Both the position numbers and the translations under genes were made by a program. This document shows, one piece after another, positions 1 through 59,374 of a stretch of 64,000 nucleotides of DNA (the stretch's first letter is position 1; each line of letters begins with the position of its first letter). Under the pieces are notes generated by a model. The model ran no database searches, was not told the DNA's origin, and saw nothing but the letters and a program-made list of their open reading frames with translations. The stretch comes from Anthoceros angustus (lineage: Eukaryota > Plantae > Anthocerotophyta): positions 179,757 to 243,756 of the forward strand of contig MU008218.1 in NCBI GenBank assembly GCA_010909165.1. Reading direction: 5' to 3'.

Positions 1-1334
1 GATGGTTTGCGGTTTGCCGAATGTTCTTCCATCCTCAACCAATCCAACCAGGCCGTACACAGTCAATACCATTGATGAACATATCGACATGCTTGTAAGT
101 ATGTTTGATGTGCATACTATGTTTCGCCGACCTGGTCCTGTGGTTTATCGTTCTTGACTTTGGAGACAAGCAGAGAATGTCATTCCGGTTCATGGACGTC
201 TGCGGTTTGTGTATGTGCAGATGGTCTGTCATCACCTCAACAAGAGCATAGCAGAAGACGTTGCTTTCGCAGAGTCCAGGATCCGTGGTGAGACCATAGC
301 TGCAGAGGATATCCTTCATGACATGGGCGCCATCAGCATGATGTCATCTGATTCTCAAGCCATGGGTCGCATAGAGAGGTTGCACAGGATCACTAAACCG
401 TGTGTACAGCTAGCTTGAGGAAAACTCGTTATGTGGAGGTGTGCTCATCAGTTTGACATTGTTTCAGGTTATAACGCGCACGTGGCAGACAGCTCATAAA
501 ATGAAGCAGCAACGGGGACAGCTGCCCGACGCATCAGCTGATGACAATGATAATCTAAGGATCAAGCGTTACATAGCAAAATATACTATTAATCCTGCTA
601 TTGCCCATGGTTTTCCAGGCTTGTTGGATCTGTTGAGGTGTGTACCACTTGTTGAGCTTGATTTAGGATATGTCTCTGGATGTCTCATAAATAGGAATGA
701 ACATCTGTGTCCTGAGTGCAGGTCGGGAAGCTTGCTGATTTAGTCTTATGGAAACCTGCCTTTTCGGACTAAACCGGAAATGGTTATAAAGGAGGAGTTA
801 TTGCCTGGGCTCAAATGGGTGATGCCAATGCAAGCATTCCAACTCGGAACCTGTATGTGTCATTGTGCTTCAGCCTGTTGAAAATTACGTGTCTTGATTC
901 TCGTCTCGGCTGTACTGCAAGCGCTGATCATTTTGTTGTTGAGAGATATTGCAACAGGTTTTGATGAGGCCGATGTTTGGAGCTTTGGGGAAGGCTGGGA
1001 GCTCACATTCAATCGCTTTTGTTAGCAAGGTATGGCTTTAGTCTTGAACATTTGGGTCTGGCTGCAGTCTATTTAGCGTAGGAATGCTGAAGAGAATCTT
1101 GGGCATTCTCCAGGCTGCCAAGTTGGCTGACGTTAAAGCGGAATATGGACTTCAGAAGCGTGTGGAGGAAATACAGAATGTTAGAAATCTAACCAAAAGG
1201 GACATGAAACTGAATGACTTAACGCCCGACATTGTCATCGACCATGAACATTACACTGTATCCGCCGATGGAGTGATGCTTACTTGCCAGCCTGCTGCCA
1301 CCTGCCACTGACACAAAACTATTTCCTGTTCTAG
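1..1334 (+). CDS. URE: Urease, 3' part. Exons approx <1-94, 221-378, 468-637, 722-852, 958-1029, 1114-1334
   Basis: Exons translate to [25 protein letters not shown] / [22 protein letters not shown]...SSDSQAMGR / [13 protein letters not shown]...[15 protein letters not shown] / [12 protein letters not shown]...[12 protein letters not shown] / LMRPMFGA / ...[10 protein letters not shown], the conserved urease alpha-domain C-terminus. All five introns are GT-AG (84-126 nt). A few 1-nt indels at homopolymers. Confidence 0.97.
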
Positions 1335-1352
1335 TTTAATTCTTCTGTTGCG

Positions 1353-1442
1353 ATGAGGACTGATCCTGACGATTGTGCAGCTCTGGACAAAACGCCTGGT
1401 CCAGGGGCCAAGAACCAGTCACTGAGGTACCTGATCCTTTAA
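1353..1442 (+). promoter_or_regulatory. Candidate 29-codon upstream ORF whose TAA overlaps the UreF ATG (TAATG)
   Basis: ATG at 1353, open to TAA at 1440-1442; UreF ATG at 1442-1444. Could instead be an N-terminal extension of UreF broken by one sequencing indel. Confidence 0.35.
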
Positions 1443-2160
1443 TGGGTACCTCGGCTCGAGCAAGCCATGAAAGTGATGTCAAACATCTTCCATTGGAGTG
1501 GAGTGTGTGGCAGCTGCTTGATTCCCTACTGCCAACAGGTGGATTTGCTCATTCCTACGGTCTGGAGGTTGCTGCGCAAACTCATCTGGTAGCGGATGCT
1601 ACCTCACTTGAAGACTTTATCACATCATCTCTGGAGGGAGTAGGTGCTCTGATGCTGCCGTTTATTTATTGTGCTCACAAGCAGCCAAGGACAGACTCTT
1701 GATTCAGTTAGACCAACTGTTTCATGCAACGCTGACGAACCAAGTTGGAAGAAAGGCATCGTTGGCTCAAGGAGCTGCCCTTCTGCGAGTGGCTGCCACG
1801 GTGTTTGTAGATATTGCAGAGTTGCCGACCATGCGTGCTACTGCCAGGAAGCCCGGCACAGTGCATGTCCATTACGCACCCATGTATGGAGTTTTATGTG
1901 GCCTTCTTGGATGGGATTCCATGACTGCCCAACGATCTTTCCTGTTCTTAACACTTAGGATATTCTGTCAGCTGGGACGCGGTTGAATGTGGTAGGTCCT
2001 TTGAAGCAGCGTTCCTGCAGCACCGGCTTTCTAAAGTTGCAGAAGCTGTCCTGAAGAAGTATGCAAATCGGCCAGCTGAAGATGCACATCAAACATCGCC
2101 TCTACTGGATACAGTTCAAGGCTGTCATTCTCATCTATTTTCACGGCTCTTTGCTCTTAG
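1442..2160 (+). CDS. UREF: Urease accessory protein F, intronless, about 240 aa after correcting indels
   Basis: WSVWQLLDSLLPTGGFAHSYGLE, LTNQVGRKASLAQGAALLRVAA, FLFLTLRD, and C-terminal SPLLDTVQ...LFSRLFCS* (TAG ending 2160) match plant UreF. Confidence 0.93.
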
Positions 2161-2343: not shown

Positions 2344-3110
2344 TCAGGTTTCAATTGGTTTTCTCTCTCTCGACGCTTGCATGCTGTATCCGCTTGTGTC
2401 TCTTATGGCGTCCACAATGCCATTGTACCCGTTTTCGGTCGATCTAAAACTTCGCGGCCATACCGGGATACCAAAGAATCCTCTTGTCTCAAGAAATGAA
2501 AGGTGTTTGAAATGCAATTCGTTGGATGTTGGTGCTTTTTCACGTTCCGTTGCCTCCTTCCCTGTGTAGGTAAGAATGCACCACAGATCGGGTTCTTTGG
2601 TCTCATTTTTGTTTGTGTGGATTGCGACCCAGTTCAGCACCACTCTCAGCTGAACAGATCTGTCGAACTGTGACGAACATACTTGAAATCTGGTGAAGGG
2701 ACCTGCCTTTCATAAGCACTGAGGCTCTCACGAAGCTTAATTCCCAACCGGAGATGATTTGGACTTGTTTTCACCTTCCTTGGCGTTGTGTATGCTGCAA
2801 CCATAAATTCTCAGCAATATGCAGTTTTCAATGCGCCAGCCAACCACAACGTAGTGGACTGGGTGGATGAGCGTGTGGCATCGGCCTCGCGACGTCTGAC
2901 ATTTTTGTTGAGTGGTTCCACCACATTCGAAAGATGCAGCCTGGGTGACATTTTCACGGAAGCACTTGTTGGTTCTCAATGGTATTCCGCAGCAAAAGTG
3001 TTGTAGCAAAATTGCAAATCCGTGAAGAGGCAAATCCCAGCCAGGCCATAGGGTTAGATTAGCGTGTCATGTTGGCACACACAAGCAATGTATGGCGACG
3101 GTTGGATGGA
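2344..3110 (-). pseudogene. Unidentified coding-like remnant, paralogous to 9739-10266
   Basis: Motif WDLPLHGFAIL..HF.CG.PLRTNKC.RENVT.A.SFECGGTTQ is shared with the diverged copy at 9739-10266; family not recognised. Confidence 0.35.
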
Positions 3111-3373
3111 TAGTTATCATGTAGGACAAAGAAGAAACCTTGAGCTTTGAAAAGGTATGCCAACCTTCTACAAAAATTAGTGCAATATCATCACCCTAGT
3201 GCTCATCCACCGAGGCTCAACGGACATTTGTGGTTCCATTCAGTTTTGTCCAAAGGGGTTCAGCCCGTGGACTGCCTCCCGAATAAAGAAATCGGATCGT
3301 TGAACCAAACTCAACCACATACTTTTCATTCTATGATTCAAGCAGTGGATGCGGTTGGATGTGGTTGTCTCTG

Positions 3374-3610
3374 GGTGTAATAACCGTTGGCTGCGGCTTG
3401 AAATATAATTCGTTGAATTTTGGTGCTTTATCATATTCTTTTCCTGTAGGCCAAGAATTCACCACAAATAGGCTTCTTTGATCTCATTTTCGCTTGTGTG
3501 GATGGCGACCTAGCTCACTCCATTCTCGATTGAACATATCTGTAGGTGTAATAACCTTTGGTTGCGGCTTGAGATATAATTCGCTGAATTTTTGCTTTAT
3601 CGTATTCTTT
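3374..3610. repeat. Short tandem duplication (about 171-bp unit); second unit interrupted by the copia insertion and continuing at 9739
   Basis: GGTGTAATAACC...TATCATATTCTTTTCCTGTAGGCCAAGAATTCACC at 3374-3460 recurs from 3545 up to ATTCTTT (3610) and resumes as CTTTTCTGTATAGGCCAAAAATTCACC at 9739. Confidence 0.8.
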
Positions 3611-3788
3611 TGTGAATAAAAGCTGTAATCACAATAATGAGAATTAAAATATTATGAATATACATGAGGGCTTATATAGCAAAACTGTCTAAGGTTGTGT
3701 CGCTCAAGTTAACCTAATTATTTATTAGATAACTAATATCTAATAGGCTTCGTTTATAAGGAGAACCGTAGAGATTCTCCTTCCAACA
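3611..3788 (-). repeat. 3' LTR of copia element
   Basis: TGTGAATAAA...TTCCAACA, matches 9558-9738. Confidence 0.93.
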
Positions 3789-4269
3789 CGCCCGTAACGG
3801 AACGCACGCTTGTTAGTGGAGTGTGGCGGCGTAACGATGCCAAGCTCCATAGCTCAATGCCTCGCACTCGCTCCTTCGTGATTGCCACTTATCTCTTGTA
3901 CCAAAGACCGCGCGATGAGCAAAGAAAGAGCGACGTGGGAGGATGCGGAGGCGAGAGACGATGCGGTCGTCACCCGGATACAAGCGTTACCGAACAGCGA
4001 TGGCAAATTGCTGGCTGGGAGTGGCAGCTGCAACTCTGGCTGACTGTGAAGAAGCTTGACGCCATCCCAGCACTGCATCCTGAAGAGGAGTTACGCGCGC
4101 AATTCAAGTGTGCCGCTGCAAGCCCACTGCCTCAAGACAGCTAAGTACTCTAGTAGCTGCAGTATGCGATTGGGTTTGAGCTTGTTGCTTCATCCACCAT
4201 AATCTGCAATGGTCAAAAGTCCATAGAGATTGGAGTCCGTGAGGCGGGCATCGCCCTGCTCCATGTGTT

Positions 4270-7200
4270 GATAATGCTTGCTAGCGGTGACACTTCATCG
4301 TAATGTCGGCGTGTTTAGTGCATCGACACATGCCGGATTCTCACATGCGGCTCCGCAGTGTCGGATAAAGTGATGATGCACTTCGATGTGCTTTGTACGC
4401 GCATGAAACCGAGGGTTTGCGGCACGCAATGGTAGACATGTTGTCACAAGAATAGGAGTAGGGTCATGTGATGAATACCAAGGCCCGAACTGCGTTCCCA
4501 GACAGCCTCTTTAGCGCTCCTACGCTTTGTATTCACCGGTGGAGGACAAAGCCCAAGATTGCTTCTTCGAGCTCCAGGTGACAGTGGAATTCAAAGTGAA
4601 GCAATATGCCGAGATGCTTCGTCGGCATCGGGTCGTGGCCTAGTCGGCATCGTAGTAACCACACAAGGTAGGTGCTTGCCTCGCCCCAGGCAGGCCATAT
4701 TGCTGAGTGCCTTTTAGGTATCGGAGGACCCTCTTAACCGCACTCCGATGCGGGGCCGATTGTCGGCGGGAGGCGAGCTCACACTCGAATATGCGGCCTT
4801 GTCCGGCCTTGTCCAAGAATCGATGTAATTGAGGCAGCCCACGGCATGGCGATAGGAACTGAGCCATGGCACAGCGCTCCTCATCTGTCTGTGGACACGA
4901 TCATGAGACAACCCGAGGCCGGCAACACGGGGGTGGACATAGGTTTGGCGTGTCCGATGAAAACGGTCACGGAGTTTCGATATATTTAGCTTGATGAAGC
5001 ATAAGGGAGCCAGCTTCCAGATCACGAACAAGTTGGACACCGAGGACAAAGGTAAGAGCTCCAATGTCTTTCATGTCAAATTTTTGGCGAAGCATGTCTT
5101 TAACCGAGGATAACAAGCCTTGGTCGTTGGATGCGAGGATGGCATCACGACATACAAAGCAAGAATCACAAGGGAACCATCCTTGCTTTGTAAAATACAC
5201 GTTTGCATCACTGTGGTTTTGAATGAAACCAATAGAGCGAAGGTACTTGTCAATTGTTTTGTACCATTCTCGTGCATTGCTTTAACCCGTAGATAGTCTT
5301 CTTCGGATGGCGGACCCAATCCGGGTGCTTAGGGTCTATAAAACCCTCGGTTGGGACATATATATGTCCTCCTCCAACTCACCGTATAAAAATGCCGGGG
5401 CGTCCATCTGTGGAGGTCCCAAGCATTTCTTTGCAGTGAGCAAGAATCATACGGATAGGCGGGTCTTCTAGCAGGGGTGAAAGTCTCGAAAGTCTATCCA
5501 CAGGATGGGTGAAACCCACGGCCACGAGCCTCGATTTGTAGCGAGCAATCTCACCACGAGCATTCAACTTGTGCTTGAAGACCCACTTGCGGTGACAACT
5601 TTTCGACCTTTAGGTAAGGGGCACGACTCCCATGTATCGTTTTAATCAAGGAGTCGTGTTAGTCCTTGATAGATGGTATCCAATGTGCCTTGTCACTCCG
5701 GTGGTTGCCTCTCTAAGGTGAGGTTCGAGCTTGAGAAAAAAGCGGAGTGCTCACGGGGACTTGGATTGTGGCATGGATACTCCAGCTCTAGGTCGTCGAA
5801 AATCAATAGAAGCATATGGAGGTTAGTCGCTGCGAGGAGGATTCCTCGTCGTTGAGGATACCGCGTTCTTGGTGACGGCCACGGGGACTTGATCAGTCAT
5901 CCTCAGCGGAAGCAGAATCGGGTAAATTTTCATTCAAACCAGATTACGTAGAGTGAGCAGACATCTTCCACAGCCTAACTCATCAACCTCGTCCTCTGCT
6001 GATCGTTCCGGAAATCGTGTATATCCGGAGCTGGTCCTCATGAGCCAAGTCGGCGGGAGTGCTTCATGGGTAACTAAATCGAGCATGATCATCCGGTGCA
6101 GCAAGGTCATTAGCCCGTGGATGTGCGGGACCTCTCGTGGTTTGGCTTGTTGCGGGGGCATCAATAAAAACAACACCGGTGAATCATCTTGTGGGAATTC
6201 GGATGAAGCTTCCATATCATCAAGTCTACATGAGTAACACGTTATTTATCGGACGTGATCAAAGTATGGCTTGGCGGGACATGCGAGCTCCTTGAAAGTC
6301 ACACTTCTTGCAAAACCGCGGTCAAGGTAAGTGGATCAATCACTTATAAGCTTTACTTCTTCTCCATATCCCACGAAGACAAGTGGTGCTCGGTCTTCTA
6401 ATTTCAGCCGCCGCTCTTCATGGATGTAGGCATATCTTTGAGCCGAATACCCTCGGATGGGAGACTAGGCTTCCTACGCCATATCACCTCAAATGGGGTC
6501 CGCCATCCACAAGACTAGTCGAGCCTGCTTAAGAGATAAGTCGGCGTGACCCGCCTCACCCAAGTATGCCTTGCTTAAGCCCGCCCATTCTAACATCTGC
6601 GTGTCATGCCCAGGAGTAGTTGATTCGCTCAACACCGTTACCTGCTGAGTATAAGGGACAATCAGTACACCTCTTTCCAACAAGAATCGGTTGAAGTGGG
6701 CGTGAGTGAATTCGCCCAGATTGTCATCTGACGAATTTGTTGTAACAAACACCACGTTTGTCTCTCCGCCATCACCAACCATTCCTTAAATACTTGAAGG
6801 TATCGGACTTCAACCTAAGTGGGTAAGTCCAGAATAGCGACTAAAGTCGTGGGTGATGGTAAGGTAGTATAGGGCGCCGCCTAGAGAGGAATATGTATCT
6901 TGCAGATATGCTGCATGTACTAACTCTAATACTTGTGATGCTCGATGAGCCAGATCGAGGAAAAGGAAGTTCCTTTGTGGCTGATTACGAGCATCACAAA
7001 GAGGTAAGTCTTTAAAACATTTCGCAAGGGCTCTCTATAGCATTGTGAGACATCTTTATGACTTATCTTTATTAGCATGACCTAATCGGCATGCCATAAA
7101 CTAGCTTAAGACTGTGATAGATAAGTAGCATGCCTGACTGGAGGGATGCATGTGAGATCAAGCTGGTACAAGTCATGAAAGAGATGTCCTTTAGCTACGA

Positions 7201-8430
7201 CTGTCCTTCCCCTCGCTTCTTAAGTGCACAACTATGAGAAGTGAAAAGAGGTCGTACTCTGGAGGACAATAATTGACCCGAAAGTAGATGCTTGGCCATA
7301 AGAGGTACATGCAGGGCGTTGTCAAGATGGAGGATGGACCCATCGTTCAACCGAAAGCGACATGTACCGCACCCGACAATATCGCAGAGATCTTGGTAAG
7401 TTCCCCAATAACTTTATCCGATGTACGAGAGGGTCTCAGAGTGAATGAGCGCACTCCTATCATTGCGGATGTGAGAGGTTGCTCAATCTAAATACCAATC
7501 GGCGGGAAGGAGGATTTGCGAAGACGTGCAAAACAGCGATCATGAATGGAGGTTTGTTGGAAGTTGAGAAGTCTTGGCGGCGTGGGCCTCGACTGCTTTG
7601 GCTTCTCGACCGAGCACTTGACTTTCTTCTTCCGAGTCTCTCTCAGGCCTTATGCCACACATTACCTGTAACCAGCCCTTGGAGGAAGGACCGGAAGGTG
7701 AGTCACCGGTCGATCGACCCTTCCGTCCTTTCTCAAACTTGTTTCCTTTGGTATAAAGAACCTCGTCGGTTTTGTTTTCCACCATGTGGTGTGGAATAAA
7801 GCCCACTTTGTTCCTCTTGCGGAGAGCACCAATTACGCCGACAAGATCGATTAGAGGTGCCGTGCTGACCTTATGCCTTGTGAATGGAAGATCCATAGCC
7901 GGGCAGATATGCGTAGCCGGGTGGTAGCAGTGAGGAGTTGGGCAACGGCGTCAACTCGAGCGAGATCCTAAGTTCAGAGCTGGGCCCTTAAGCGCCGAAA
8001 CTTCACGACGAAAGGTCCCACCTTCTCGCCTTCTTTAAGTCTCATTAGCTTGAGTTCTCCACGGATTGCACATGCGTAAGTATGTTCTTTGCCTCGTCGT
8101 TTGCGATAGTTGTGTCCGGTTCGTTGGAGTCTTCCGGGTAAGCCACATCGAGGGAGTACCTCATCAAGACCACTAATCAAGACCGTGACGAGCCACATGA
8201 TTCAGTTATCCCACTTCGATTTCATCCACCGGAGCGATGAATCTTTGGTTTAGGAATGGAGCCACTAACAATGCCCCACACGTGCACAGAGCGGCATCTT
8301 GAACACGCCATCCATGGAACTTCGTGCCATTAAAGCGGTCTTTCTCCTTAAATTCCATTGAGAAAGAGGCGGAGCGGGGATAATGTATATGGGTGGAAGA
8401 GGTGGCGACCACTCCTCCTCCTGCGCCTCA
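4270..8430 (-). pseudogene. Copia gag-pol (frameshifted in this sequence)
   Basis: DRFNGTKFHGW (gag N-terminus), LKLMRLKEGEKV..FVVKFRRLRAQL, integrase LELVHADIC...LGGALYYLTIT..FSRY and DNLGEFT, RT KWVFKHKLNARGEIARYKSRLVAVGFT and FDMKDIGALTFVLG, RNase H CGYYDAD and HIEVHHHFIR. Confidence 0.92.
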
Positions 8431-9544
8431 CCTCTGCCTGCCTCCACCTCCATCGACCCCTCCCAGCCATGCAGGGCGTATTACATGTAAAAAATTATCA
8501 GCGCACAAGGGTGATGTAGGGGAAACAAGGCAATTCTTCTCGTAATATGTCTCGCAATGCTGAAGAGTGGAGCGGCGAAGGGTGCGAGGCAACTCGGATG
8601 GCACAGGACACCTTTGGGGCGTCTGTGACGGTTAGTCGATGAATGGCGGCGTGGTATATTCGACATGGCGGTTTGCATAATCGCGTCCTGTGGGTTCTTC
8701 TTGCGATGATACCAAGATACAAGGTGCCTCCCGAAGACTTAGCGACAAGCTGGCCATCGACCCCGGTAGCCCTACCGCCCGAAGACGGCGCTTGAAATCT
8801 GGGCTTCGCGGCGAGGCGGCGCCTGGCATCCGTTGAGGTAGAATTCGCGACCAAGTCGTGCGCTGATTTCCTTTGCAATTCGGTCCACAAGGTCATGCAA
8901 TTTTCTAACATCCTCAATCGTTGTTCGCTTATGCTAATGAGGTCAACCGCGGTGAAAGCTCTTGATGGCGCGCAGTTGCACCTCGCCACAGCCGGAATCA
9001 CGGTAAGCAAGGTTGATTACGTAGTGTTCAACCTTTCACTCGGCCGGTAGGCTCCAATTATCTCTGGCGGTGAGTAGCCCGAGATCCGAATGTATCCGCA
9101 AATCGTCCTCACAAAAATCTCGAACTTGGGATGTCGCAGACGTGCACCCGGTTGGAGTCCGGATAAAGGCAACGTGTCTGATTTCTTCACTTGCGTGATT
9201 TTGTATGGTCCTCAAGCTGGTCCTGATGCTTAGTTGTGGGTGATTGCGGGGAGCGAGACGACACTCACAATGAGAACGCCCGTCGAGTCATCTTTAATTA
9301 GGCGACATGATCTGCTGGCAGCGGCCCAGATCCGCGCGGAAGTCTTTGATTTCGCCATACATATTCCTATCAATAATTTCGCTAACGTGGTAATGCGGTG
9401 TAGTGAGAAGGATTCTTCGACACATGATCCCGGAATCACAAATTCGTGATTCAAGGATTCGTGTCCTACAACCTATTCTTACTACATGCACCTACCATAG
9501 CCAAGTACATTGATGTAGATAGTAGAATCAAATCGTGTATCCGA

Positions 9545-9557
9545 GCTCACGATACCA
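9545..9557 (-). promoter_or_regulatory. Primer-binding site (tRNA-Met-like) of copia element
   Basis: Minus strand reads TGGTATCGTGAGC immediately after the 5' LTR, close to canonical TGGTATCAGAGC. Confidence 0.7.
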
Positions 9558-9738
9558 TGTGAATAAAAAGCATTGTAATCACAATAATGAGAATTAAAAT
9601 ATTATGAATATACATGAGGGCTTATATAGCAAAACTGTCTAAGGTTGTGTCGCTCAAGTTAACCTAATTATTTATTAGATAACTAATATCTAATAGGCAG
9701 CGTTTATAAGGAGAACCGAACGGATTCTCCTTCCAACA
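9558..9738 (-). repeat. 5' LTR of copia element
   Basis: TGTGAATAAAAAG...TTCCAACA followed by CTTTT. Confidence 0.93.
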
Positions 9739-10266
9739 CTTTTCTGTATAGGCCAAAAATTCACCACAAATAGGCTTCTTTGATCTCATTTTCGTTTGTG
9801 TGGATGGCGACCACTCCATTCTTAGTGAACATGTCCGAATTGTGATGAGTAAACCGGCAAGGCAAAGAGACCACTGTCATAAGCACTCGAGGCTCTCACG
9901 AAGTCTAGCTCCCAAATCGTAGATGATTTGAACATTTATTTCACTTTCCTTGGTGTTGTGTGTGTTGCAACCATAAGGTCACAGTATATAGTTTTCAATC
10001 TTGACCAAGCACAACCTCGTGGGCTGTGCGGATGAGTGTGTAACCATATGACGTTTGACATTGTTATTGAGTGGTTCCACCACATTCGAAAGATTGCGCC
10101 TAGGTCACATTTTCACGGACGCACTTGTTGGTTCTCAATGGTACTCCGCAACCAAAGTGTTTCGCCAAAATTGCAAATCCGTGAAGAGGCAAATCCCATC
10201 TTGGCCATAGGATTAGAGTAACGTGTCATGTTGGCACACACAAGCAATGTATGGTGACGGTTGGAT
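9739..10266 (-). pseudogene. Second, diverged copy of the unidentified remnant at 2560-3105
   Basis: Long collinear similarity, e.g. GAGTGGTTCCACCACATTCGAAAGAT and CAAAATTGCAAATCCGTGAAGAGGCAAATCCCA in both; contains in-frame stops. Confidence 0.5.
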
Positions 10267-11805
10267 GTGTTTGTGTATAGGTATTGCAACCATTAGTTCT
10301 TGGTACCAGACAAAAGCTTGAGAGGAACATCCGGTAGGTTTCAAAGCCACGCTTTCCTGTGTCACTAATTTGACCTCAAATGCGTTCGCCGCCCAAGGAG
10401 CTATGGAGAGAGTGAAATTGAAGGCCCACCTATTGCAAATTTTTGATGCAGCATGAAATCAAGGTAGAACATGGAGTGCGATCATGAGCACACCATGATG
10501 GTGCTTGCAAAAGCTTTATGCGAGCTAAGTTGAAGGTCACAACTAACGAGGTCTAATATATAGAGCATGTCACGCCACTCGTTGATGGTGAGGAGTATAT
10601 AGCCAAGACAATAGTCTTCACTCCCCGCAATGTATGGCTCAGCCAAAAATGGCTGAGGTGGAGGAGACAAAATGAGGTGGAGACCAAACATTTTTGGGGG
10701 CGGAATGGAGCCACAGTGAAGAGCGGGAGTGAAGAATGGAGAGCCAATAATATAGGTGAAAATGGAGAGCCAACATGAGTGAACCTATCGGGCTTATACT
10801 TCACTCAAACGTAATATATTCTCTAATATTCTCGTACTCTTTATGTTCGTCTATTAAAAGATAAGTTAAATAAGGATTTGAAGTACAATATATGGTGCAT
10901 ATAAAATAAAGAGTTAACGATAGGTACCTTTCATTGAAAAATTGAGGATTAAGTTAGTGAAGTATTAGTTAGCTAATTTGATCATCAATAAAAAAAACTG
11001 ATTAACATAGTGATAATAAATCTTCATATGAACTTCAATAAAATAAAAATTAATTGAACCATCGATGACATACATGGTTGTCGAGAAAAATATAAAAGCT
11101 TGTTCTATATATGTAACGCTATACCTTCATTAATCATCACAAATTTTTGATGTCAATATGGATGCCATAATTGCTAGAAAAGTTATAGATGATATTATGC
11201 CCTATGAGAAAAAAATAAATTATTATTTCGTAGATGCACTATTTGTACATGAAACTTTCTATGAACCACAAAACAAAGAGAATAAGAAGGTATATTAACA
11301 TTCTTCACCTTTTTATAATATTTTATTTTATTTCTTTGTTTTTCTTCCTTACGTAAGGCTATGATTGATTGCGCATACCTTAAGCGATATGAGTTTATAG
11401 GGATTTTGTGTTAAGTTTCTTGATCTCAACATTCTTCTACGAAAATTATCCGGACGTACATTCGCACGTTAAGCGATATCACGCAGTGAATAACGGCCAC
11501 TTGGCTACTATTTGTGTGAAACAAGGTATTGTTAGATACTTTGTATACATGTTTGAATCTATTGTATAAAACAAGCAACTGTTAGATACTATGTATGCAT
11601 GTTTGAATCTTTGTATGAAACAAAATCCGTTAGATACCATGTATACATACTTGAATCTATTGAATGAAATACGGTACTTTTAGATACTTTGTATACATGC
11701 TTCATCTATTGCTTCATGCCTTCATGTTTGCTATTATGACGAATGTGTAAAGGATCCTCACTTGCTACTTTGTATGTTTAAAGGTATTCAATGCTTTCGT
11801 CATAG

Positions 11806-27993: not shown

Positions 27994-28019
27994 GTTGCTA
28001 TGATCTCGTGTGTACACTA

Positions 28020-28345
28020 GATAGGCGTGCTAGGCTTAGTGTGATGCTAGGCGATGCTAGGCGATGCTAGGTGCTAGGCGATGCTAGGTGGCTAGCGGTG
28101 CTAGGCGATGCTAGGCGTGCTAGGCGAGGCTACGCGAGGCAACGTTCTTTAAGCAAGTAGGCAAGGGACTCTCAAGAGTGCCCAAGGCTTAAGGCCAAGG
28201 AGGAGGCGAAGCCCAAGTCCAAGGCCAAGGAGGAGGAGAAGCCCAAGTCCAAGGCCAAGGAGAGGAGGCGAAGAAGCCCAAGTCCAAGGCCAAGGAGAGG
28301 AGGCGCCAAGTCCAAGGCCAAGGCCAAGGAGAGGGAGGGCAAGAA
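28020..28345. repeat. Two short tandem arrays in the element's 5' leader: (GGCGATGCTA)n and (CCAAGTCCAAGGCCAAGGAGGAGG-like)n
   Basis: Directly visible at 28020-28140 and 28190-28345. Confidence 0.85.
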
Positions 28346-28970
28346 GCTACCAAGGAGAGGAATGAGGCCTCACAAGGGGCTGGCCTTTTAAGGCCAACCA
28401 ACCAAGGGAGAAACAAGAGTATTTTACTCTTGGGCCCGGATTCAAGGGATAAGGGAAGCGGATAGACATGGGTATGTCATCAGTCCATGTGATTTCACTT
28501 TCTGTCCAAAAGTCCTAGTTTGTACCCCATCCAGTACTGATCCACCACGGGTGCTTAACTGGAGTTCTGCCTTTGCTATCCAACTCACCCAGCTCACTTT
28601 TTTTGACTAGTAGCCTGCAGAGTATTTGTATGATTTTAACATGCATAGATACTTAGAGGTTTCACTAATCACGATCTAAGATAGCGGGGTGTTAACCTTG
28701 ATTAAGGGTTTGATCTAGCCACTAACCGCCTGGAGTGCATGCCGGACACACTCGATCCGGACGGAGCTACCAACCAGCAAGTCCATCGAGGCGGGTCAGT
28801 CCCGACCAAGAGGAGAAGTGCGACACTCGATTTTGGTACCACCGAAGGACGGAGGAACCATGACACAATCAACAATCTTTGAAGGATCTGAGTGGCAACA
28901 CACAAGACACGTTAGTCTGCCGGGACAACTCGGTAGCGGCGAGGAGGACTTGTCTCTTGGAGTCGTCAAG

Positions 28971-30760
28971 ATGGGAGGAGACAAGGATCGAATGGAGTTG
29001 TTCACAGGGGAGCGGCACCTTGCCCTGGAGGACTTCATCGAGAAATGCAGTGCGGTGTGTGCGGAGATGGAATTGAAGACCGGATACAGCGATACGGCTT
29101 CATCCAAATGCCAAGTACTTGGGGATGAAGCATTGGCGTGCTATCGAGCACAAGCGAGCGAGGGCTGTTGGAGGACCGGTGAGTAGTTCAAGCTCGAAGG
29201 AACCCGGTCTGAGGCGGAGCGGTGGCACCGAGTGGGCACGATCCCATCGAAGAGATGTTTGACATCTTCCAGTTTCCTGCAAGCACGGATGAGAAGATCT
29301 CGGTGACACACTTCAAGATGAAGTCGCGAGACGCAAGATGGCTTATCGAAGAATCGACCAGTTGGTACGTGACACCAAGATCATGAGTGACCGGTGGCTG
29401 CAGAAGTACTTGCAGGCATTGCCATATGCTGCGCATGAAGGTGCAACAAGCGGTGCACAGACGAAGGGCAACACTACACCCTCAAGGAAGTGTACGAGAT
29501 GGGCGACAAGATAGGGCCCACGACACTTTCTCTCGTCTTTGCAAGTGATTACTCCGGCACAAGTAGGAGTGGTGGGCGACATGACGGGAGGTCGAGTGGA
29601 GGAGCTCGGCGAGACAAGCCGCCCACAAGTGGAGCCCCTGAGGTGCCGAGGACGGACCATTCCCTCATGAGTGCGAGCATGCATTCGGAGGAGTCAAGGG
29701 TGAGGAGCCATGCCCTAGGTGTGGGAGTGCAGGCACAATGAAGCGGCATGTTGGGAGAAGCATCCGGGTGCGGCCTACGGGTTATCGGCAGCAACCCGGC
29801 CAATGCATCTGCGTCAACCTCATCCACAAAATCAGTGAGCAAAGGCGCCGTGGAGGAGGCACGGCGAAGTCCGTGGACAAAAGAAAGCGGGAAGCATCAA
29901 GAAGACGATGGGCCACGTGGCACGCCTTGCAAAGCTGGAGAAGTTGGTGCGGAAGGCGAAGATCAAGGAGAGCGGTTCATCATCAGAGGGACGAAGAAGA
30001 TGAGCACAAGCTTGGATACATGGCGGTGTGACCGGATCCAAGGGCAGGGAAGAAACCTCAGCCTACGAGAGAAGATAGCTCGGAGGAAGAAGAGGATGTC
30101 TTGACACCGGTCACGGAAGACACGGAAGGAAGCTTGGGATCCTCTTCCGAACCTATGCCAAGATGCCAAAGTCGTTTGAGCCATTGCCAGCAGGAACAGC
30201 GTGGGAGCAACATCAAAGTCCAGTGGGCGATGTGGAGAAACCCATGCAGATTCTTGTGACGATGGCACAAAAGCTTGGAGATGCCATGTTTGCCTACAAG
30301 ACATGGGGTTGGCGTGAAGGAAGTCGGGGTTTGACTCGGCGGATGTTGACAACCCTTGAAGGCGAAGCAAGTGTCGACAATGTGCCACAACGGTGGCAAT
30401 GATGTCATTCGACCTCGGGCCAAGCATCTCTGGAGAAGCGGAATCTTTGCAGTGGGAGTGGCTTTGGTCAACAATCGGAGAGGCACATTGAAATCAATGG
30501 ATTCGCACCAAGGAGGTGTTGATTGACAAGAGCAGGTGATCGTTGGAAGAAGAGTGAAGGAAGCGTTGGGTCTCCACCAAGAAAGGTTGAAGGAAACCAA
30601 GTGGAAGATCCGGCCGTGGGACCACGGAGCATGTGTTGGGGTGACAAGGTACATGTCAAGGTTTCATTCAAACCAAGAACAGACTTCACCTTTGTCGAGG
30701 TACACCGCTTGGTCACCGACACACTTTTGATGTCTTCTTTGGAGCGGACGCTTTGTACAA
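28971..30760 (+). pseudogene. Gag and retropepsin-like protease of the split-repeat element
   Basis: RMELFTGE..LALEDFIEK; HYTLKEVYEM; Cys/His knuckle-like segment near 29720-29770; HIEINGFAPRRVLID(TGA).VIVGRRVKEALGL (IDT visible in copy B at ~60484). Confidence 0.8.
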
Positions 30761-31199
30761 ACCACAGTCATGGTGGATTTGTGGACGGAGAGTCTACTAT
30801 CGACCGGTGGAGAAGCTGGAGCAAAATGAGAACGGATTGCCGCATCCCTCTGCTGCATGGCAAGGATCATGAGAACCTCATTGCCAGCGTCTACCCAGTG
30901 TTTGGCGTGTAGTGAAGGACACGCCATACGTGCTTGAACCTCTTGGCGTGTGTCTAACAACCGCAACGGCGATGGAGGATTTCGGCGAGGAGGAGGAAAC
31001 AAGCTAGGGTTGCAACCACCCTCGGAGGAGGTTCTTCAAGTCACTCGAAGCTGGTGGCAGCAATGAGCCGTGCAAAAGGCTGTGGAGGATGGTGCAAGAG
31101 GACCGTGCCTATGAGCCGGAGAACTCTGTAAGTTCTTGCCTAGGGTTGAGCCTGTTTGTGACCTAAACACCCGGTCATCACATGGCGACCTCGGGAAGG

Positions 31200-32060
31200 C
31201 GGCATAGTGCTCGTGGAACTCTTTGGAGGCATCGAGGCCGGTGCTAAAGTGTGGCATCAAAGTGCGAAGATCGTGCATTGTGACCCGGATCCAAAAGCAA
31301 GGATTGTGTCAGGCGTAAGAGACTTGATGGGGAGTACCTAACCTCGGCGTGGGAGTCGGTGAAGGGTTACCGAGGCCGATGGATGTTCGCATGATAGGGT
31401 TGTCCCATTTGAGTTGTCTTGGGCAAGTGGACCTTGTCATCGCGAGTTGGGAGTGTCAAGGACTATCCTCTGCAGGCAAGGGTCAAGGTCAGGATCCACG
31501 AACATTGTTCTATGACTGATGAGGATCTTGCGCTTGATCCAGAAAGGGCAAGAAAGGCCTTGTGGATACATGTTGGAGAATGTGCCGGCATGCATGAGCG
31601 TGAAGAAGCAAGTTCGGAGGACTTTGCCACGATCCGAGGAGTGTTGGGTCGAGCTTCTATTGGATGCGCTCAATTTGGTTCGAGGGCTCATAGGTTGAGG
31701 TCCATGTGGACTAACCTTGCTCCCTTGGAACATTTGAAGTGTCGTCGTTCACCAAGCGACCTAATCATGTTGTCAAGGATGTGCTAGCATCGGAAGGCAT
31801 GCCCAACAAGTCATCAAAGACAAGCTGCCGCACTTCCGTGAACACGCTGGACACCCCATGGCGGCTTGGCCAACCTTTGTGTCTAAGTCCAAGTCTTACG
31901 CCTTGGGAACCATGGCGTTGTGGTGGACAGACATGGCGAGGCCTTGGGAGAGCCAACAGCCACAGAGAGGAGTTGGCCATGGGATTTGATGAGCCACAGA
32001 CACCGGTGGCCGAGAAGGCAGTGTCGATTGCTTGGGCAAGCATTTGACGTGAACATGATG
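31200..32060 (+). CDS. C5 cytosine DNA methyltransferase domain inside the retroelement pol region (frameshifts may be sequencing errors)
   Basis: Motifs in canonical order: I VELFGGIEAG (31213); IV VDLVIASWECQGLSSAGKGQG.DPRTLF; VI YMLENVP; VIII AQFGSRAHRLRSMWTN; IX ERELAMGF; X RLLGQAFDVN. Confidence 0.88.
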
Positions 32061-32427
32061 ACCGTTGTTTAGCTAGTCGCTTAACCGAAACCAGAAGGCG
32101 GGGTTGAAGCGGCGGGGTTCGGTGGGTGAAGGACATTGCACTCGCATCTCAGGAGAAGGCGAGTTTGGAGGGCAAGGAGGCGAGCACGTAGAGCGTGCAA
32201 GCCATCGAGACAACCACATGAGTGGTTAACGTCGAGTTGAAGAGCAATCAAGCGTCGGCTAAAGGAGTTGTTGGGCATGCATGACATGTATTTGCTTTCA
32301 CGCGAGATGGGGAAGTACACCAAAGGGAAGTTCCACATAGAACTAATCAAGAATGAACCCGATTCTCAGCGAGGCTGCATGGGCAAGAAGAAAATGACGA
32401 GCAGCGCTGGGGAGAGTAGTCCACATG

Positions 32428-33913
32428 TGGCGGGACTTTGCCGATGATGGCCAGCCAAGGCCAGACAATCCTGTCGTTGTGGGAAGTCCGCTCCCAAGGG
32501 AATGGTCTCTGCTTATTCTGCGAGTTTACAAATTATCACTGAGCGGACTTCTATCAGTTGGGTCAAGCGGCTCCAGACAACCCTAAGTGTGTGCCCTCCA
32601 CAACCTCGTCGGACCAAGGTAGCCCACCTGACCTTCCCACAAACCCGCCTTGGATTTCTCCAAGATACCTAACGGGTTTAACGACGCTCCTTCCTGGGCC
32701 CATCGTGCTCTAGCGCCCCAGCGGCTCCTCAACTCTCCGGCCCACCCACCTCAACACACACGCCGTGCTCCACCCTTCTCTCTTATCCATTCCTGCCTAG
32801 TAGTCACAACACCAACACGCCGATGTATTCACACAGGCCGCCTTTGCCCCCCTCCGGGGCACGCGTTTGCGGAGAAGTGGCTCACTGCATCCCCTGCTCC
32901 GTTCAGCCTCCAAGGATGGCTTCCGCCCAAGCGCTTCGCCTCCCATCCCCTCCGGGCCTTCACGTTGGAGAAGTGGCCGCATGCAGCCTGCATCCCCACG
33001 CTCCGCCCGGCCTCAAGGTTGGTCTCGCACCCAGCAATCACCCGCGAGCACCTCCCGAGCTCAGTCCGACCCAGTGCGCACCCATCAAGCGTGTTGGAGC
33101 TCCGTCAGAGCTCTAAACACATCCTCTACTCCATTAATCACCTGCGGTGACGCAGAACTCACTCGCCTCCTCGAGCACGGAAGAGCAAAAACGGCACGCC
33201 AAGATGGTACCGGATAGTCTCGCCGTCTTGGACGCCGGGCCTTCCTATATACTCCCCATACCCTAACCTAACCCTGCCTATGTATGTATCCTAACCACAC
33301 TATGTATGTACTTAACCCTAGGTCGCGGTAATCACATGGGACGTAGCTCATCACCTGCACGGACTTCTTGCACCAGCCGCTCCCGCCAAACAGTAGATCC
33401 ATGCCAGCGATGCCCACCCAACCAAACCACCCTACCCGACCACTCGGATTGGGACTTGCCGACCAGACCACTCGCGACCTCTCAAGGACCGAGACCACTC
33501 GGCGGGCCCGCCCGGAGCCGGGACCACTCGCCCGGACCTCGCCGGATCCAGACCTGGGCCCGGACCCTACGGGACTCAGACCACTCCGTCGGACCCGCCG
33601 GACCCTCTAAGCCAGACCCTCGACGGACTTCCTCGGACCTGGCCCCGGACGGACCACTCCGGACTCTCGCCGGACGGACACCCGGGCCCAGACGGGGACC
33701 ACTCCGTCAGACTCGAATGGACCACTCACGGACCTCGCCCGAACCGGACCACTCCGTGGACCTCGCCCGAGGGGCAGTAGGGATTGCAATCGTATAACCG
33801 CCCAAAAATGGCTCATTGGCTAACTTTCCTCCCTATCCCTCTTAACAAAGAACGACCCGAAAAAAAGCAAAACAAATGGCTAAGAGTACTGGACGCCAGT
33901 TTGGCACTCCACA
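32428..33913. mobile_element. Solo LTR (~1.49 kb) nested in copy A
   Basis: TG...CA ends, ACATG duplicated at 32423-32427 and 33914-33918; absent from copy B at the homologous site (~61985); internal GGACCACTC-type repeats at 33440-33770. Confidence 0.85.
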
Positions 33914-34080
33914 ACATGAGATGTGCCCATAAGGATGTCAAGACAAGCTCCTCATGGACAAGGTTCATAACCTCCTGGGCGACTTCCCAAGGAGATTGGT
34001 TTTGTGCTGTCGCTACATGAGGTGCGTCGTGTAGTCCTACTAATGATAATGTTTTGACTTAGAGTCTCACATTATCGAGG

Positions 34081-47989: not shown

Positions 47990-48700
47990 GCCACGTAGGG
48001 AGACCTCACCACTCCCTATGGTAGGGAGACACTCTCATGACACTCTCATCCTACCTACCTATCCAACTACCGTCCGTAGGGAGCCCCTGTCCTTATCTTA
48101 TCTATGCATGGTCACCCTCCCCACATCTTATCTATGCATGGTCACCGGTCTACCTACATCACCCTACCTGCTTCACCCTCCCTACCTTTACCACACGCAC
48201 CGCCCTACACATGCTTCACCCTCCCTGCACCACACTGCCCTACACTCACCTCCTCCTACGCTACCACACGCCATCCTGTCACACGCACTGCCTCTACCCC
48301 CTACATAGGGGCCCTCACGGTCGACACACACCTTGCCTCGCCCTACCCCTATGTAGGGTCACCAGACTACCCTACATACTGCCTACAAGGTGTCCCTACA
48401 CATACATGCTAGGGACCCATGACCTGCTATGTAGGGTCACCTTTGTCACCCTACGCCTACGTCCCCATGACCTATCTACCCTACATACTACCCTACAAGG
48501 TGTCGTCCTACCCACATACATACCCGTGGGGACCCATGACCTATCTATGTAGGGTCACCTTTGTCACCCTACGCCTACGTCCCCATGACCTATCTATGTA
48601 GGGTCACCTTTGTCACCCTACGCCTACTCTATGTAGGGTTAGCATTTGACACCCTACGCACTGCATTTGACACCCTACGCACTGGCTTAAAGTGTCATGT
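47990..48700. repeat. Degenerate tandem array (CACCCTACGCCTAC / GACCTATCTATGTAGGGTCACCTTTGT units) in LTR-element DNA
   Basis: Near-perfect ~55-bp units at 48520-48630 plus many CCCTAC submotifs. Confidence 0.75.
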
Positions 48701-51182
48701 AGGGAGCCCCCCTCCATTCTTGTAGGGCCAACTATCACCCTACATCTACCCCTTGTAGGATGCACCTCCCTCCCTACGGTAGGGAGTGCCATGCCCTACG
48801 TCCACCACCACCCTACACCTCCTTCGCGTAGGGTGCACCACTCAAACACTCTCCCAATCTCCCAATTAGCTCTCATGACTTGCAAATATAACAAGTTGAA
48901 ACACCTCACAAAAGGTGCCCCATCCGATTAATCCACCCCTAGGACGCTTAACTCCGTGGGTTCTTACATTTCATTGTCCAACACACCAATTGGCTTGTGC
49001 ATAACACTCATCTAGAATAAAATGAACTTATCCTCGGTGAACTTCTCACGCCCAACCCTCCTTGCTATCCATTTCTCCTCGGCCATCACACGGCCTCCCT
49101 TCACTTTGACTTGCAAATTCACGCATTCCGCCATGATGCACACCCTGCTGATCCCTTCACCATGTTGCGTACCCGCAACACCGCCTTCCTATGGTTTGGC
49201 CACACCTCCATCTTGCAGCCTGGCCCATAAATTCAGCCGTGAGTGCTCTACCATGGCCTTTCCTAGTTCAACACACGGCCCTATCATGCCATCCTCCCAT
49301 CGTGACTCCATTAAGAGCACTTCCATGTGCCTCACCGCCATGGCCTCCTCTTGCAACCCTTGTGGCTGCTCACCCTCAACATGAGCTCCTCGCCCCATCC
49401 TTGCACCAACGCCTCCTCTCTCTCGCATCGAGCTCCCAACCTAGAGCCCCGCAGCATCTGCACAATTCCATCATTACGCACTTGGCCCATCTTCCTGCAG
49501 CAACCCTTGCCACACATCTCTACCTAGCGCCCTCCCCATCGCAAAATCTCAAAGAATATGATCACCTGCCCATGTCTCACTTCTTCCACACGTGGCAAAT
49601 TACTTTGCCTTCCTCAAACCTGTGGTGGTCCCCAATAATCGTGCCTTTGCCTCTCGTAGTTTATCACCTGCTGCAGCAACCTCAAGCTACTTCCTTGGCT
49701 TAATTGCCTTCACCCTCTACTCCTCATTCTCCAACAAATTGCCTCAATATCTTGACAATTCTCTTCCACTTCACTTCAATTCTCTCCGTCAGCCTCTCTA
49801 GTTTTGCTCTAGTTTGATCCTTTTGATCCAAAAGTAGGAGTGCCCAAACTTTCATATTCCACATACTCCCCACCTCACTTGTTTGCGTCCTCAAAACAAC
49901 CTACCATTGTAGATACTCCATCGCCTTCCACATTCATCGAGTGACAAGTGGTCATGTTAGATGCCCTAGCTACGTACACTTTCCGTGAAAATACAAAACA
50001 TCACTTCCTTAAAACACAACCTCTCCATCTCGTCTGTGCATGTTGTGGAAGGACATCTTCAAATTCCAAGACCTCGAGCTCCTAAATGTGCCATGAATGC
50101 TCCCAAGCCTCCCACCAAATTTCCACATAATCCTTCGTGAGCAACTTCAAAAGCTTGCAATTCCTCTCTTCAAGGCTTTGGTCATCACTCCTTCCTCAAG
50201 ATGTCCACTTCAATCCGCAATTCCTCCTCAAATTCTTCCAACTTCCTTCAAGTGACTCTCTCCCCACCTCGCTCCTTGTCTTCCATCTCCAATCTGCTCA
50301 TATCAAGACAAAGCAAAGCCTCAAGATGCAACTTGAAGCAACCTCCTTGAGATAGCTCCTCCACTTGACTCCTCCTTGCAACATAGGCAACCCCATCTTG
50401 AGCACGGTACCAACCCGTCACGCATACAACAAGAACACTCACAATAACATTGGAAGCACTCACTCTTCAATGGCCTTAGACATCTCCCAAATAATAGCTA
50501 CACAACCCGCTCAACAACACAATTACTTCCTCCCTTGATGCCAAAAGAAGCATCCAAGCCCTCCAAGCTCGAATTCAAGTTCTTCGTCTCAACCACACAC
50601 CGCAAGGCAAGACCTTGAGCATGTCCCCACAGGGCCCCTTCCTCAAAGTAAGCCCTCGGCCACCACCTAGCCTCCATAAACTATCCATTGGTCAAGAACA
50701 CCTCCACTTCCTCCTAGACATCATCCTCATGAAATCTTAAGTACAACAACATATGCCCACTCTCAAGCTCTTTCTTCTAACCAACGCCCCAGACAATAGC
50801 CCGCTCCTCATGCTCGCATTCTTAGCTCGCCTCCAAATCCCTCGAAATTACTAACACTGCTCAATTCTTGACCCTCACCCCACAAGAACTCCTCGACAAC
50901 CTCCTTCCTCTTGTTGTCCGTGAGCACATCCTTCTCCGCTCTTAGAAACTACCTTCTTCCTCACCGTAACCCTTGAAGATGTTAGCACATGTAGCTTCCT
51001 CAAGAGCTCTCTCCTCGCCTTCTTCCTCTACCGTCATGCAACTCTCACACCACTTGCAAAATCAGCGGGCGATCTCCTCTCTATGCCCGCAATAAAACTT
51101 CTTCTTCTCATCCCCGATTAGAGATTCTCAACAATGTTCATGCCTCTTCCACTACCGACTTGCCAAAGCAAAGAGTCTTAAC

Positions 51183-53842: not shown

Positions 53843-53875
53843 TACTCCCTTCTCATACATATGCCTCCGCCAACA

Positions 53876-59360: not shown

Positions 59361-59374
59361 TGTAGCGACTACCA

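What the first reader, a model, noticed from the sequence alone, without database searches (positions are those of the whole stretch)
1114..2160. Urease and its activator UreF in an operon-like tandem in a plant genome
Seen: the urease stop (TAG 1332-1334) is only 18 nt from the next ATG and 107 nt from the in-frame UreF ATG (1442), on the same strand. Established: UreF with UreD and UreG is required for nickel activation of urease; the genes form operons in bacteria, and to my knowledge are unlinked in angiosperms. Inference: there is little room for a urease 3' UTR/polyA site plus an independent UreF promoter, so a bicistronic mRNA or overlapping transcription units are likely. A spliced enzyme gene followed by an intronless accessory gene would be a eukaryotic functional cluster.
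Basis: partly seen in the sequence, partly recalled or inferred. Interest (0 to 1): 0.75.

Follow-up and report, generated by a model that had tools for sequence, protein, structure and literature searches.

The report
Urease–UreF neighbour genes in a plant
In this land-plant-type genome the gene for urease is followed only about 107 bases later, on the same strand, by the gene for its nickel-loading helper UreF; the same gene order occurs in several green algae and in bacterial urease operons, so it looks like an old arrangement that was kept, but nothing here shows that one mRNA serves both genes.

Summary
The last six exons of a single-chain urease end at TAG 1332-1334. An intronless UreF gene starts at ATG 1442, 107 nt later on the same strand, and there is an earlier ATG at 1353.

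As assembled, both genes are broken by about 11 one-base deletions, each in a base run and none giving an in-frame stop. I read these as long-read assembly errors, not decay.

UreF is about 56-61% identical to every land-plant UreF and groups with streptophytes, not bacteria. No close relative was found.

The same order, urease then UreF (usually then UreD), occurs in:
- Klebsormidium nitens
- four unnamed eukaryotic assemblies, with gaps of 166-416 nt
- dozens of bacterial ureABC-F-G operons

It is absent within 10 kb in Marchantia, a lycophyte, Chara and the other plant-like contigs.

The algal urease/UreD/UreF neighbourhood is already published (PMC7826186). I found no paper on a land-plant case.

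A bicistronic mRNA is untested. The spacer has no poly(A)-like hexamer and no unusual RNA structure.

This scan already reported the same kind of pair 23 kb upstream on this DNA piece (s1-267886). The present copy is therefore either a second tandem copy or an assembly duplicate.

Verdict: real, modestly interesting, a new member of a known kind.

The parts
1..97 (+). Urease exon, cut by the window start. Donor GT at 98.
   Evidence: Aligns to urease residues 557-587 of L095 and to the K. nitens urease.
221..378 (+). Urease exon. One 1-nt deletion near 373.
   Evidence: Amidohydro_1 at E=3e-7. 84-88% identical to algal ureases.
468..637 (+). Urease exon. One 1-nt deletion near 612, in a T run.
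   Evidence: Amidohydro_1 at E=2.5e-6. The reading frame changes within the exon.
722..852 (+). Urease exon with about four 1-nt deletions, near 766, 772, 789 and 847.
   Evidence: Frames 2, 3 and 2 are needed to read [37 protein letters not shown].
958..1029 (+). Urease exon.
1114..1334 (+). Last urease exon. One 1-nt deletion near 1299. Stop TAG at 1332-1334.
   Evidence: The C-terminal [10 protein letters not shown]-stop matches L094, L095, L098 and L099.
1335..1441 (+). 107-nt spacer between the urease stop and the UreF ATG.
   Evidence: No AATAAA-like hexamer (one mismatch allowed). RNA fold z-score -0.08. No Rfam match.
1353..1442 (+). Upstream ORF of 29 codons. Its stop TAA (1440-1442) overlaps the UreF ATG as TAATG. 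Alternatively it is a UreF N-terminal extension broken by a dropped base.
   Evidence: Which reading is right was not resolved.
1442..2160 (+). Intronless UreF gene of about 240 codons. It reads in four frame pieces: 1442-1690, 1693-1959, 1959-2003 and 2009-2155.
   Evidence: PF01730 at E=1.8e-12. PDB UreF matches. Colinear alignment to plant UreFs at 56-61% identity. Groups with streptophytes in the tree.

Best explanation
This is a real head-to-tail pair of vertically inherited plant genes. A spliced single-chain urease gene is followed about 107 nt (at least 18 nt) later by the intronless gene for UreF, the accessory protein that acts with UreD and UreG to load nickel into urease.

The pairing is a retained piece of an older urease-UreF-UreD neighbourhood. 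That neighbourhood is still present in streptophyte and other green algae, and it has the same order as bacterial ureABC-F-G(-D) operons. Here UreD is no longer next door, and transposon-rich DNA follows UreF.

The roughly 11 frameshifts are assembly errors (dropped bases in runs), not gene decay.

On expression (inferred, not shown): the two genes most likely form overlapping but separately translated mRNAs. The UreF promoter or 5' leader would lie inside the 3' end of the urease gene, and the urease 3' UTR would run into UreF. Tight linkage would then give co-regulation, not true operon-style translation.
For: Identity and anatomy of the two genes.

Vertical origin: the window's UreF is 56-61% identical to gymnosperm, angiosperm, lycophyte and Marchantia UreFs. 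In the tree it sits in the land-plant plus Chara group (SH-aLRT 85), apart from the bacterial clade (98).

Same order and same strand elsewhere:
- K. nitens has urease, a lipoyl-ligase gene, UreF, then UreD.
- L094 has a spliced urease, a 166-nt gap, an intronless UreF, then UreD.
- L095-L097 have urease, 313 nt, UreF, 248 nt, then UreD.
- L098 has urease, 416 nt, then UreF.
- L099 has the urease C-terminus, 265 nt, UreF, then UreD.
- About 55 loci that I take to be bacterial, found in metagenomes, have ureC directly before ureF. In L036 the order is ureAB, ureC, a 4-nt gap, ureF, ureG.

Error signature:
- Every frame break I could resolve by eye is a single-base deletion in a base run.
- No piece has an in-frame stop, and conservation holds along the full length.
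- The longest ORF in the 64 kb is 223 aa.
- Base runs of 5 or more are depleted compared with the other plant loci, though close to the GC-rich K. nitens locus.

No poly(A)-like hexamer lies between the urease stop and position 1749. The first one after UreF is at 2491-2500.

Plant UreF ORFs are always intronless and usually carry a 5'-leader intron (PMC3130180).
Against: - No transcript of this species was seen, so the mode of expression is inference only.
- No close relative was found in any collection. The spacer length and the frameshifts therefore could not be checked against cleaner sequence.
- Marchantia, Diphasiastrum, Chara and the plant-like metagenome contigs lack the pairing within 10 kb. 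Retention therefore requires several independent break-ups.
- K. nitens has another gene between urease and UreF.
- The depletion of base runs is only moderate, and K. nitens shows similar values.
- The land-plant placement has moderate support, and the hornwort assignment comes only from other notes of this scan.
Confidence: 0.6

Rival explanations
1. Shared transcription unit. UreF is made from RNA that starts at the urease promoter. Either it is a read-through bicistronic mRNA, with UreF translated by reinitiation or internal entry, or an alternatively spliced mRNA joins upstream urease exons to an acceptor in the spacer.
For: - The spacer is only 18-107 nt and has no poly(A)-like hexamer. 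The first such hexamers after the urease stop are inside UreF (1749) and after it (2491-2500).
- The upstream ORF stop overlaps the UreF start as TAATG.
- An acceptor-like ttgtgcag at 1372-1379 resembles this gene's own intron ends.
- Seed-plant UreF genes have 5'-leader introns that remove upstream AUGs (PMC3130180).
- The tight spacing persists in a transposon-rich genome.
Against: - No RNA data were available.
- Scanning ribosomes would meet about 840 urease codons and many AUGs before reaching UreF.
- The spacer shows no unusual RNA structure (z-score -0.08) and no Rfam element.
- The TAATG overlap and the acceptor-like motif are short enough to arise by chance, and the reading frames here are unreliable.
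- Plant poly(A) signals are degenerate, so the absence of AATAAA says little.
Confidence: 0.13
2. This copy is a decaying duplicate. The functional urease-UreF pair is the one reported 23 kb upstream, and the frameshifts in this window are real.
For: This copy carries about 11 frameshifts in about 1.57 kb of coding sequence.
Against: - All the breaks I could resolve are 1-nt deletions in base runs.
- There are no in-frame stop codons and no larger indels.
- Conservation is at the level expected of orthologues up to the last residues of both proteins. A pseudogene old enough to carry 11 indels should carry many substitutions and several stops (inference).
- Other notes on this genome report the same error type in expressed genes (unchecked).
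Confidence: 0.12
3. This copy is an assembly duplicate. The genome has one urease-UreF locus, and the noisy assembly wrote it twice about 24 kb apart.
For: A second pair with the same spacing lies 23 kb upstream. Other notes on this genome describe repeated pieces inflated by the assembly and carrying nanopore-type errors (unchecked). Duplicated regions are typically polished poorly, which would explain the error load here (inference).
Against: I could not see the upstream copy, so its identity to this one is unknown. Tandem segmental duplications are common in plants. Nothing in the window itself shows a 24-kb period.
Confidence: 0.15
4. The pairing arose anew in this lineage by chance rearrangement or selection for linkage, and was not retained from algal ancestors.
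For: The pairing is absent in Marchantia, a lycophyte, Chara and the other plant-like contigs. UreD is not linked here. K. nitens has an intervening gene.
Against: Order, strand and close spacing are the same as in five independent algal-grade loci that branch just outside the land-plant group. Re-creating exactly this arrangement by chance is unlikely (inference).
Confidence: 0.1

Closest known systems
Green-algal urease / UreD / UreF gene neighbourhood (Ostreococcus tauri chromosome 15, Bathycoccus, Klebsormidium nitens; Foflonker & Blaby-Haas 2021, PMC7826186; Qiu et al. 2013 is cited there for a urease-assembly cluster)
   Same: A eukaryotic single-chain urease is physically linked to its accessory genes. 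In K. nitens the order and strand are the same as here: urease, then UreF.
   Different: - Here only UreF is linked. No UreD lies within the 62 kb downstream.
- The gap is much shorter: 107 nt against 1067 nt, with an intervening gene, in K. nitens.
- The host is a transposon-rich land-plant-type genome, not a compact alga.
Unnamed eukaryotic assembly L094 (Logan run SRR9302961)
   Same: Closest in anatomy. It has a spliced urease ending in ..YFLF-stop, a 166-nt gap and an intronless UreF on the same strand.
   Different: UreD follows directly in L094. Its UreF branches outside the land-plant group. The organism is unknown.
Bacterial urease operons of the ureABC-ureF-ureG(-ureD) type (for example metagenome locus L036; the Mycobacterium-type order is from my own knowledge)
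   Same: The catalytic subunit gene is followed directly by ureF on the same strand.
   Different: - Bacteria transcribe and translate these genes as one operon, with gaps of a few bases.
- Here the subunits are fused into one spliced gene.
- ureG is absent from the cluster.
- UreF is only about 40% identical to the bacterial proteins, and co-transcription is unproven.
Polycistronic loci of green algae
   Same: Two ORFs lie on one strand with a short gap between them.
   Different: In the described cases, as I recall them, the upstream ORF is short enough for ribosomes to scan past it. Here the upstream ORF is about 840 codons. No transcript evidence exists for this locus.
Angiosperm urease system (Arabidopsis, soybean)
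   Same: The proteins are the same, and UreF has an intronless ORF (PMC3130180).
   Different: The genes are dispersed. Soybean UreF lies on chromosomes 2 and 14 with no other urease accessory gene in the mapped region. Angiosperm-like contigs show no urease within 10 kb of UreF.

Membership tests
UreF (Pfam PF01730) | Significant match to the family profile, and colinear alignment with known UreF proteins over the whole length | tested here: met
   PF01730 at E=1.8e-12 above the curated cut-off. PDB UreF chains at E=0.002 for the N-terminal piece. Four pieces align end to end with plant UreFs at 56-61% identity, including the C-terminal PLLD..QG.H..LFSRLF.
UreF (Pfam PF01730) | One uninterrupted reading frame | tested here: inconclusive
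   The assembled sequence has three certain and one probable 1-nt frame breaks. Their pattern fits sequencing error, but no cleaner sequence of this species was found.
Eukaryotic single-chain urease | C-terminal alpha (amidohydrolase) domain colinear with known 838-aa ureases and ending at the conserved C-terminus | tested here: met
   Amidohydro_1 hits. Alignment to residues 557-838 of the L095 urease and to the K. nitens urease. Only the last third of the gene lies in the window, so the gamma, beta and N-terminal alpha parts could not be seen.
Operon / polycistronic transcription unit | Same strand and a short gap between the genes | tested here: met
   Both genes are on the + strand with a 107-nt gap.
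Operon / polycistronic transcription unit | One RNA molecule carries both ORFs, and the downstream ORF is translated from it | not testable with these tools
No transcript of this species was reachable. I could not check this, and overlapping UTRs would give the same signal.
Conserved functional gene neighbourhood | Same genes, order and orientation in distant lineages | tested here: met
   K. nitens, L094, L095-97, L098 and L099, and bacterial operons. Absent in Marchantia, Diphasiastrum, Chara and the plant-like contigs.
Full algal urease-UreF-UreD cluster | UreD directly downstream of UreF | tested here: not met
   A tblastx comparison of the K. nitens cluster with the whole window gives no credible UreD hit. 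A repeat region and a copia element follow UreF.

The most novel reading that the evidence does not exclude
A land plant still runs a remnant of the urease operon as one transcription unit. UreF would be expressed from RNA started at the urease promoter, either as a read-through bicistronic mRNA with reinitiation at the TAATG overlap, or by alternative splicing into an acceptor in the spacer. The 107-nt linkage would then be held by selection for making the enzyme and its maturation factor together.
Probability: 0.12. Interest if true: 0.8.

Novelty: new member of a known kind. Interest (0 to 1): 0.42.

Why it matters
Urease accessory genes are the textbook case of genes that sit in operons in bacteria and are scattered in flowering plants. 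A land-plant-type genome that keeps urease and UreF about 100 bases apart links those two states.

Together with the algal loci found here, it suggests that the order urease, UreF, UreD is old in the green lineage and was broken up repeatedly. It also offers a concrete, easily tested candidate for overlapping or shared transcription of an enzyme and its maturation factor in a plant.

Practically, it warns annotators of this assembly that both genes are probably intact despite many frameshifts.

Tried and rejected
- A word search with the 86-aa N-terminal UreF piece found nothing. Its length limits exclude full-length UreFs.
- A profile search weighted towards the window pieces found no same-genus UreF. 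The best hits were gymnosperms at about 60% identity.
- A metagenome scan with the 89-aa middle piece found no close relative.
- No UreD is present in the window.
- A literature search for the Logan run accessions, meant to name the algal assemblies, returned no papers. The organisms of L094-L099 stay unknown.
- Searches for hornwort plus urease, and for polycistronic plus urease, found no relevant paper.
- The spacer has no significant RNA structure and no Rfam family.
- Ten of the 17 ORFs of 150 aa or more in the window had no Pfam match, so they give no second gene against which to judge the error rate.
- A retrocopy origin for the intronless UreF is rejected, because plant UreF ORFs are always intronless.
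- Bacterial contamination or gene transfer is rejected. The urease has spliceosomal introns, and UreF groups with streptophytes.
- I sent no joined (spliced or frame-corrected) urease or UreF model to any search tool. Exons and frame pieces were searched separately by reference. Only for the tree did a script join the four UreF pieces, with X at each break.

Full report
**What is in the sequence**

The window opens inside a gene on the + strand. Reading the three frames and comparing with an uninterrupted 838-aa urease from locus L095 and with the Klebsormidium nitens urease gene gives six exons. They lie at 1-97, 221-378, 468-637, 722-852, 958-1029 and 1114-1334. Together they cover urease residues of about 557-838.

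Pfam Amidohydro_1 matches two of the exons. The gene ends with the conserved [10 protein letters not shown] followed by TAG at 1332-1334.

After a 107-nt spacer (1335-1441), an ATG at 1442 opens a UreF gene without introns. Its identity rests on three results:
- The middle piece matches Pfam UreF at E=1.8e-12.
- The N-terminal piece matches solved UreF structures.
- The whole gene aligns end to end with plant UreFs.

**State of the genes**

Neither gene is open as assembled. Urease needs about seven frame changes, near 373, 612, 766, 772, 789, 847 and 1299. UreF needs three or four, near 1690, 1959, 2006 and probably 2155.

Every break I could resolve by eye is the loss of one base from a run of identical bases. 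No in-frame stop occurs inside any piece, and conservation continues to the last residues of both proteins.

Across the window as a whole:
- The longest ORF is 223 aa.
- Base runs of five or more are scarcer than in the other plant loci, though close to the GC-rich K. nitens locus.

I conclude, as an inference, that these are long-read assembly errors and not decay. Other notes on this genome say the same of other genes (unchecked). One consequence is that the 107 nt is approximate. A 29-codon ORF starts at ATG 1353, and its TAA (1440-1442) overlaps the UreF ATG as TAATG. It may be a true upstream ORF, or it may be the real N-terminus of UreF put out of frame by one dropped base. In the second case the gap would be 18 nt.

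**Whose genes**

The window's UreF is 56-61% identical to gymnosperm, angiosperm, lycophyte and Marchantia UreFs, and about 47-49% identical to the K. nitens and Chara proteins. I built a maximum-likelihood tree from the four UreF pieces, joined with X at the breaks inside a script only. It places the window's UreF in an unresolved group of land plants plus Chara (SH-aLRT 85). Algal sequences branch just outside, and the bacterial clade is clearly apart (98).

No near-identical protein or DNA was found anywhere. I can therefore say "streptophyte, of land-plant type". The hornwort label comes only from other notes of this scan.

**Is the pairing conserved?**

I looked up the genomic context of UreF in other lineages. 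These loci have the same order on the same strand:
- K. nitens has urease, then a real lipoyl-ligase gene, then UreF, then UreD.
- L094 has a spliced urease, a 166-nt gap, an intronless UreF, then UreD.
- L095-L097 have an 838-aa urease, 313 nt, UreF, 248 nt, then the start of UreD.
- L098 has urease, 416 nt, then UreF.
- L099 has the urease C-terminus, 265 nt, UreF, then UreD.

In the tree these loci all branch outside the land-plant group.

About 55 soil-type metagenome loci have ureC directly before ureF. In L036 the order is ureAB, ureC, a 4-nt gap, ureF, then ureG.

By contrast, these loci show no urease within 10 kb of UreF:
- Marchantia polymorpha
- Diphasiastrum
- Chara
- five long plant-like metagenome contigs
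- one chlorophyte-like contig (L100)

The window holds no UreD. UreF is followed by a repeat region and a copia element.

The simplest reading is that urease-UreF-UreD is an old arrangement in the green lineage, with the same order as one type of bacterial operon. It was broken in most land plants, and half of it survives here.

**What is already known**

Foflonker & Blaby-Haas 2021 (PMC7826186) list a urease/UreD/UreF neighbourhood in Ostreococcus tauri, Bathycoccus and K. nitens, and they cite Qiu et al. 2013 for a urease-assembly cluster. The algal cluster is therefore not new.

For plants, PMC3130180 reports three points:
- The UreF ORF is always intronless.
- It usually has a 5'-leader intron that removes upstream AUGs.
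- Soybean UreF genes sit on chromosomes 2 and 14, with no other urease accessory gene in the mapped region.

I found no paper describing urease-UreF linkage in a land plant.

**How it probably works**

UreF acts with UreD and UreG in the nickel-loading complex for urease. This is established and is described in the papers listed.

A gap of 18-107 nt cannot hold both a 3' UTR with a poly(A) site and a promoter, so the two transcription units must overlap (inference).
- The spacer has no AATAAA-like hexamer. The next ones are inside UreF at 1749 and after it at 2491-2500.
- The spacer has no unusual RNA fold (z-score -0.08) and no Rfam match.

I favour separate, overlapping mRNAs, with UreF started from inside the 3' end of the urease gene. 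Translating UreF from a true urease-UreF mRNA would mean restarting after about 840 codons.

A shared promoter with alternative splicing remains possible. An acceptor-like ttgtgcag lies at 1372-1379. No RNA data were reachable, so this step is unproven.

**Relation to earlier work of this scan**

Note s1-267886 reports the same kind of pair, also with a 107-nt gap, 23,109 nt before this window on the same DNA piece. Its follow-up reached the same reading: an algal arrangement kept in one land-plant lineage, with the mRNA question left open.

I confirmed the algal gene order independently. I could not check its statement that the gap is transcribed.

The present locus is thus a second copy. It is either a real tandem duplicate or a duplicate written by a noisy assembly (one search gives leads for the latter), and I could not tell which.

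**Verdict**

The "functional cluster" reading is supported and extended by comparative evidence. The bicistronic reading is untested and less likely.

It is a new land-plant-type member of a known algal and bacterial kind of neighbourhood, of moderate interest.

Noticed in passing
window 1422-1454: A 10-bp inverted repeat (CTGAGGTACC ... GGTACCTCGG) brackets the UreF start codon, which sits at the 3' end of a 13-nt loop. A second 8-bp hairpin lies at about 1381-1407. The region as a whole folds no better than shuffled sequence (z-score -0.08).
   Followed up: partly
window 3624-9739: A copia-type LTR retrotransposon on the minus strand. Direct repeats of at least 166 nt at 3624-3789 and 9574-9739 are 97% identical, and a fragment at 4967-5197 matches RVT_2. 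All its ORFs are fragmented.
   Followed up: partly
window 2566-3600 and 9749-10267: The DNA just after UreF is built of repeated units. 64-nt copies lie at 2566, 3447 and 9749. 54-nt copies lie at 3368 and 3539. A 218-nt copy at 2891 recurs at 10050. The order of the units differs on the two sides of the copia element.
   Followed up: no
L011 9217-9870 (Klebsormidium nitens): An intron-free lipoyl-ligase-type gene (LplA-B_cat, E=2e-45) sits between urease and UreF in the K. nitens urease cluster.
   Followed up: partly
L095-L097 (Logan SRR8128903/06/07): Contigs of 4.5-5.2 kb carry an unknown 218-aa ORF, an intron-free 838-aa urease, UreF and the start of UreD in a row, with gaps of 115-313 nt. 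If these runs are RNA-seq, they could be polycistronic or overlapping transcripts. The organism and library type are unknown.
   Followed up: no
window 28000-34000 and 48000-60000: GC-rich stretches (0.53-0.61) have strong GC skew, down to -0.44 at 48-52 kb. The five ORFs of 160-192 aa that I tested there gave no Pfam match.
   Followed up: no
window 46867: A single N in the assembly.
   Followed up: no
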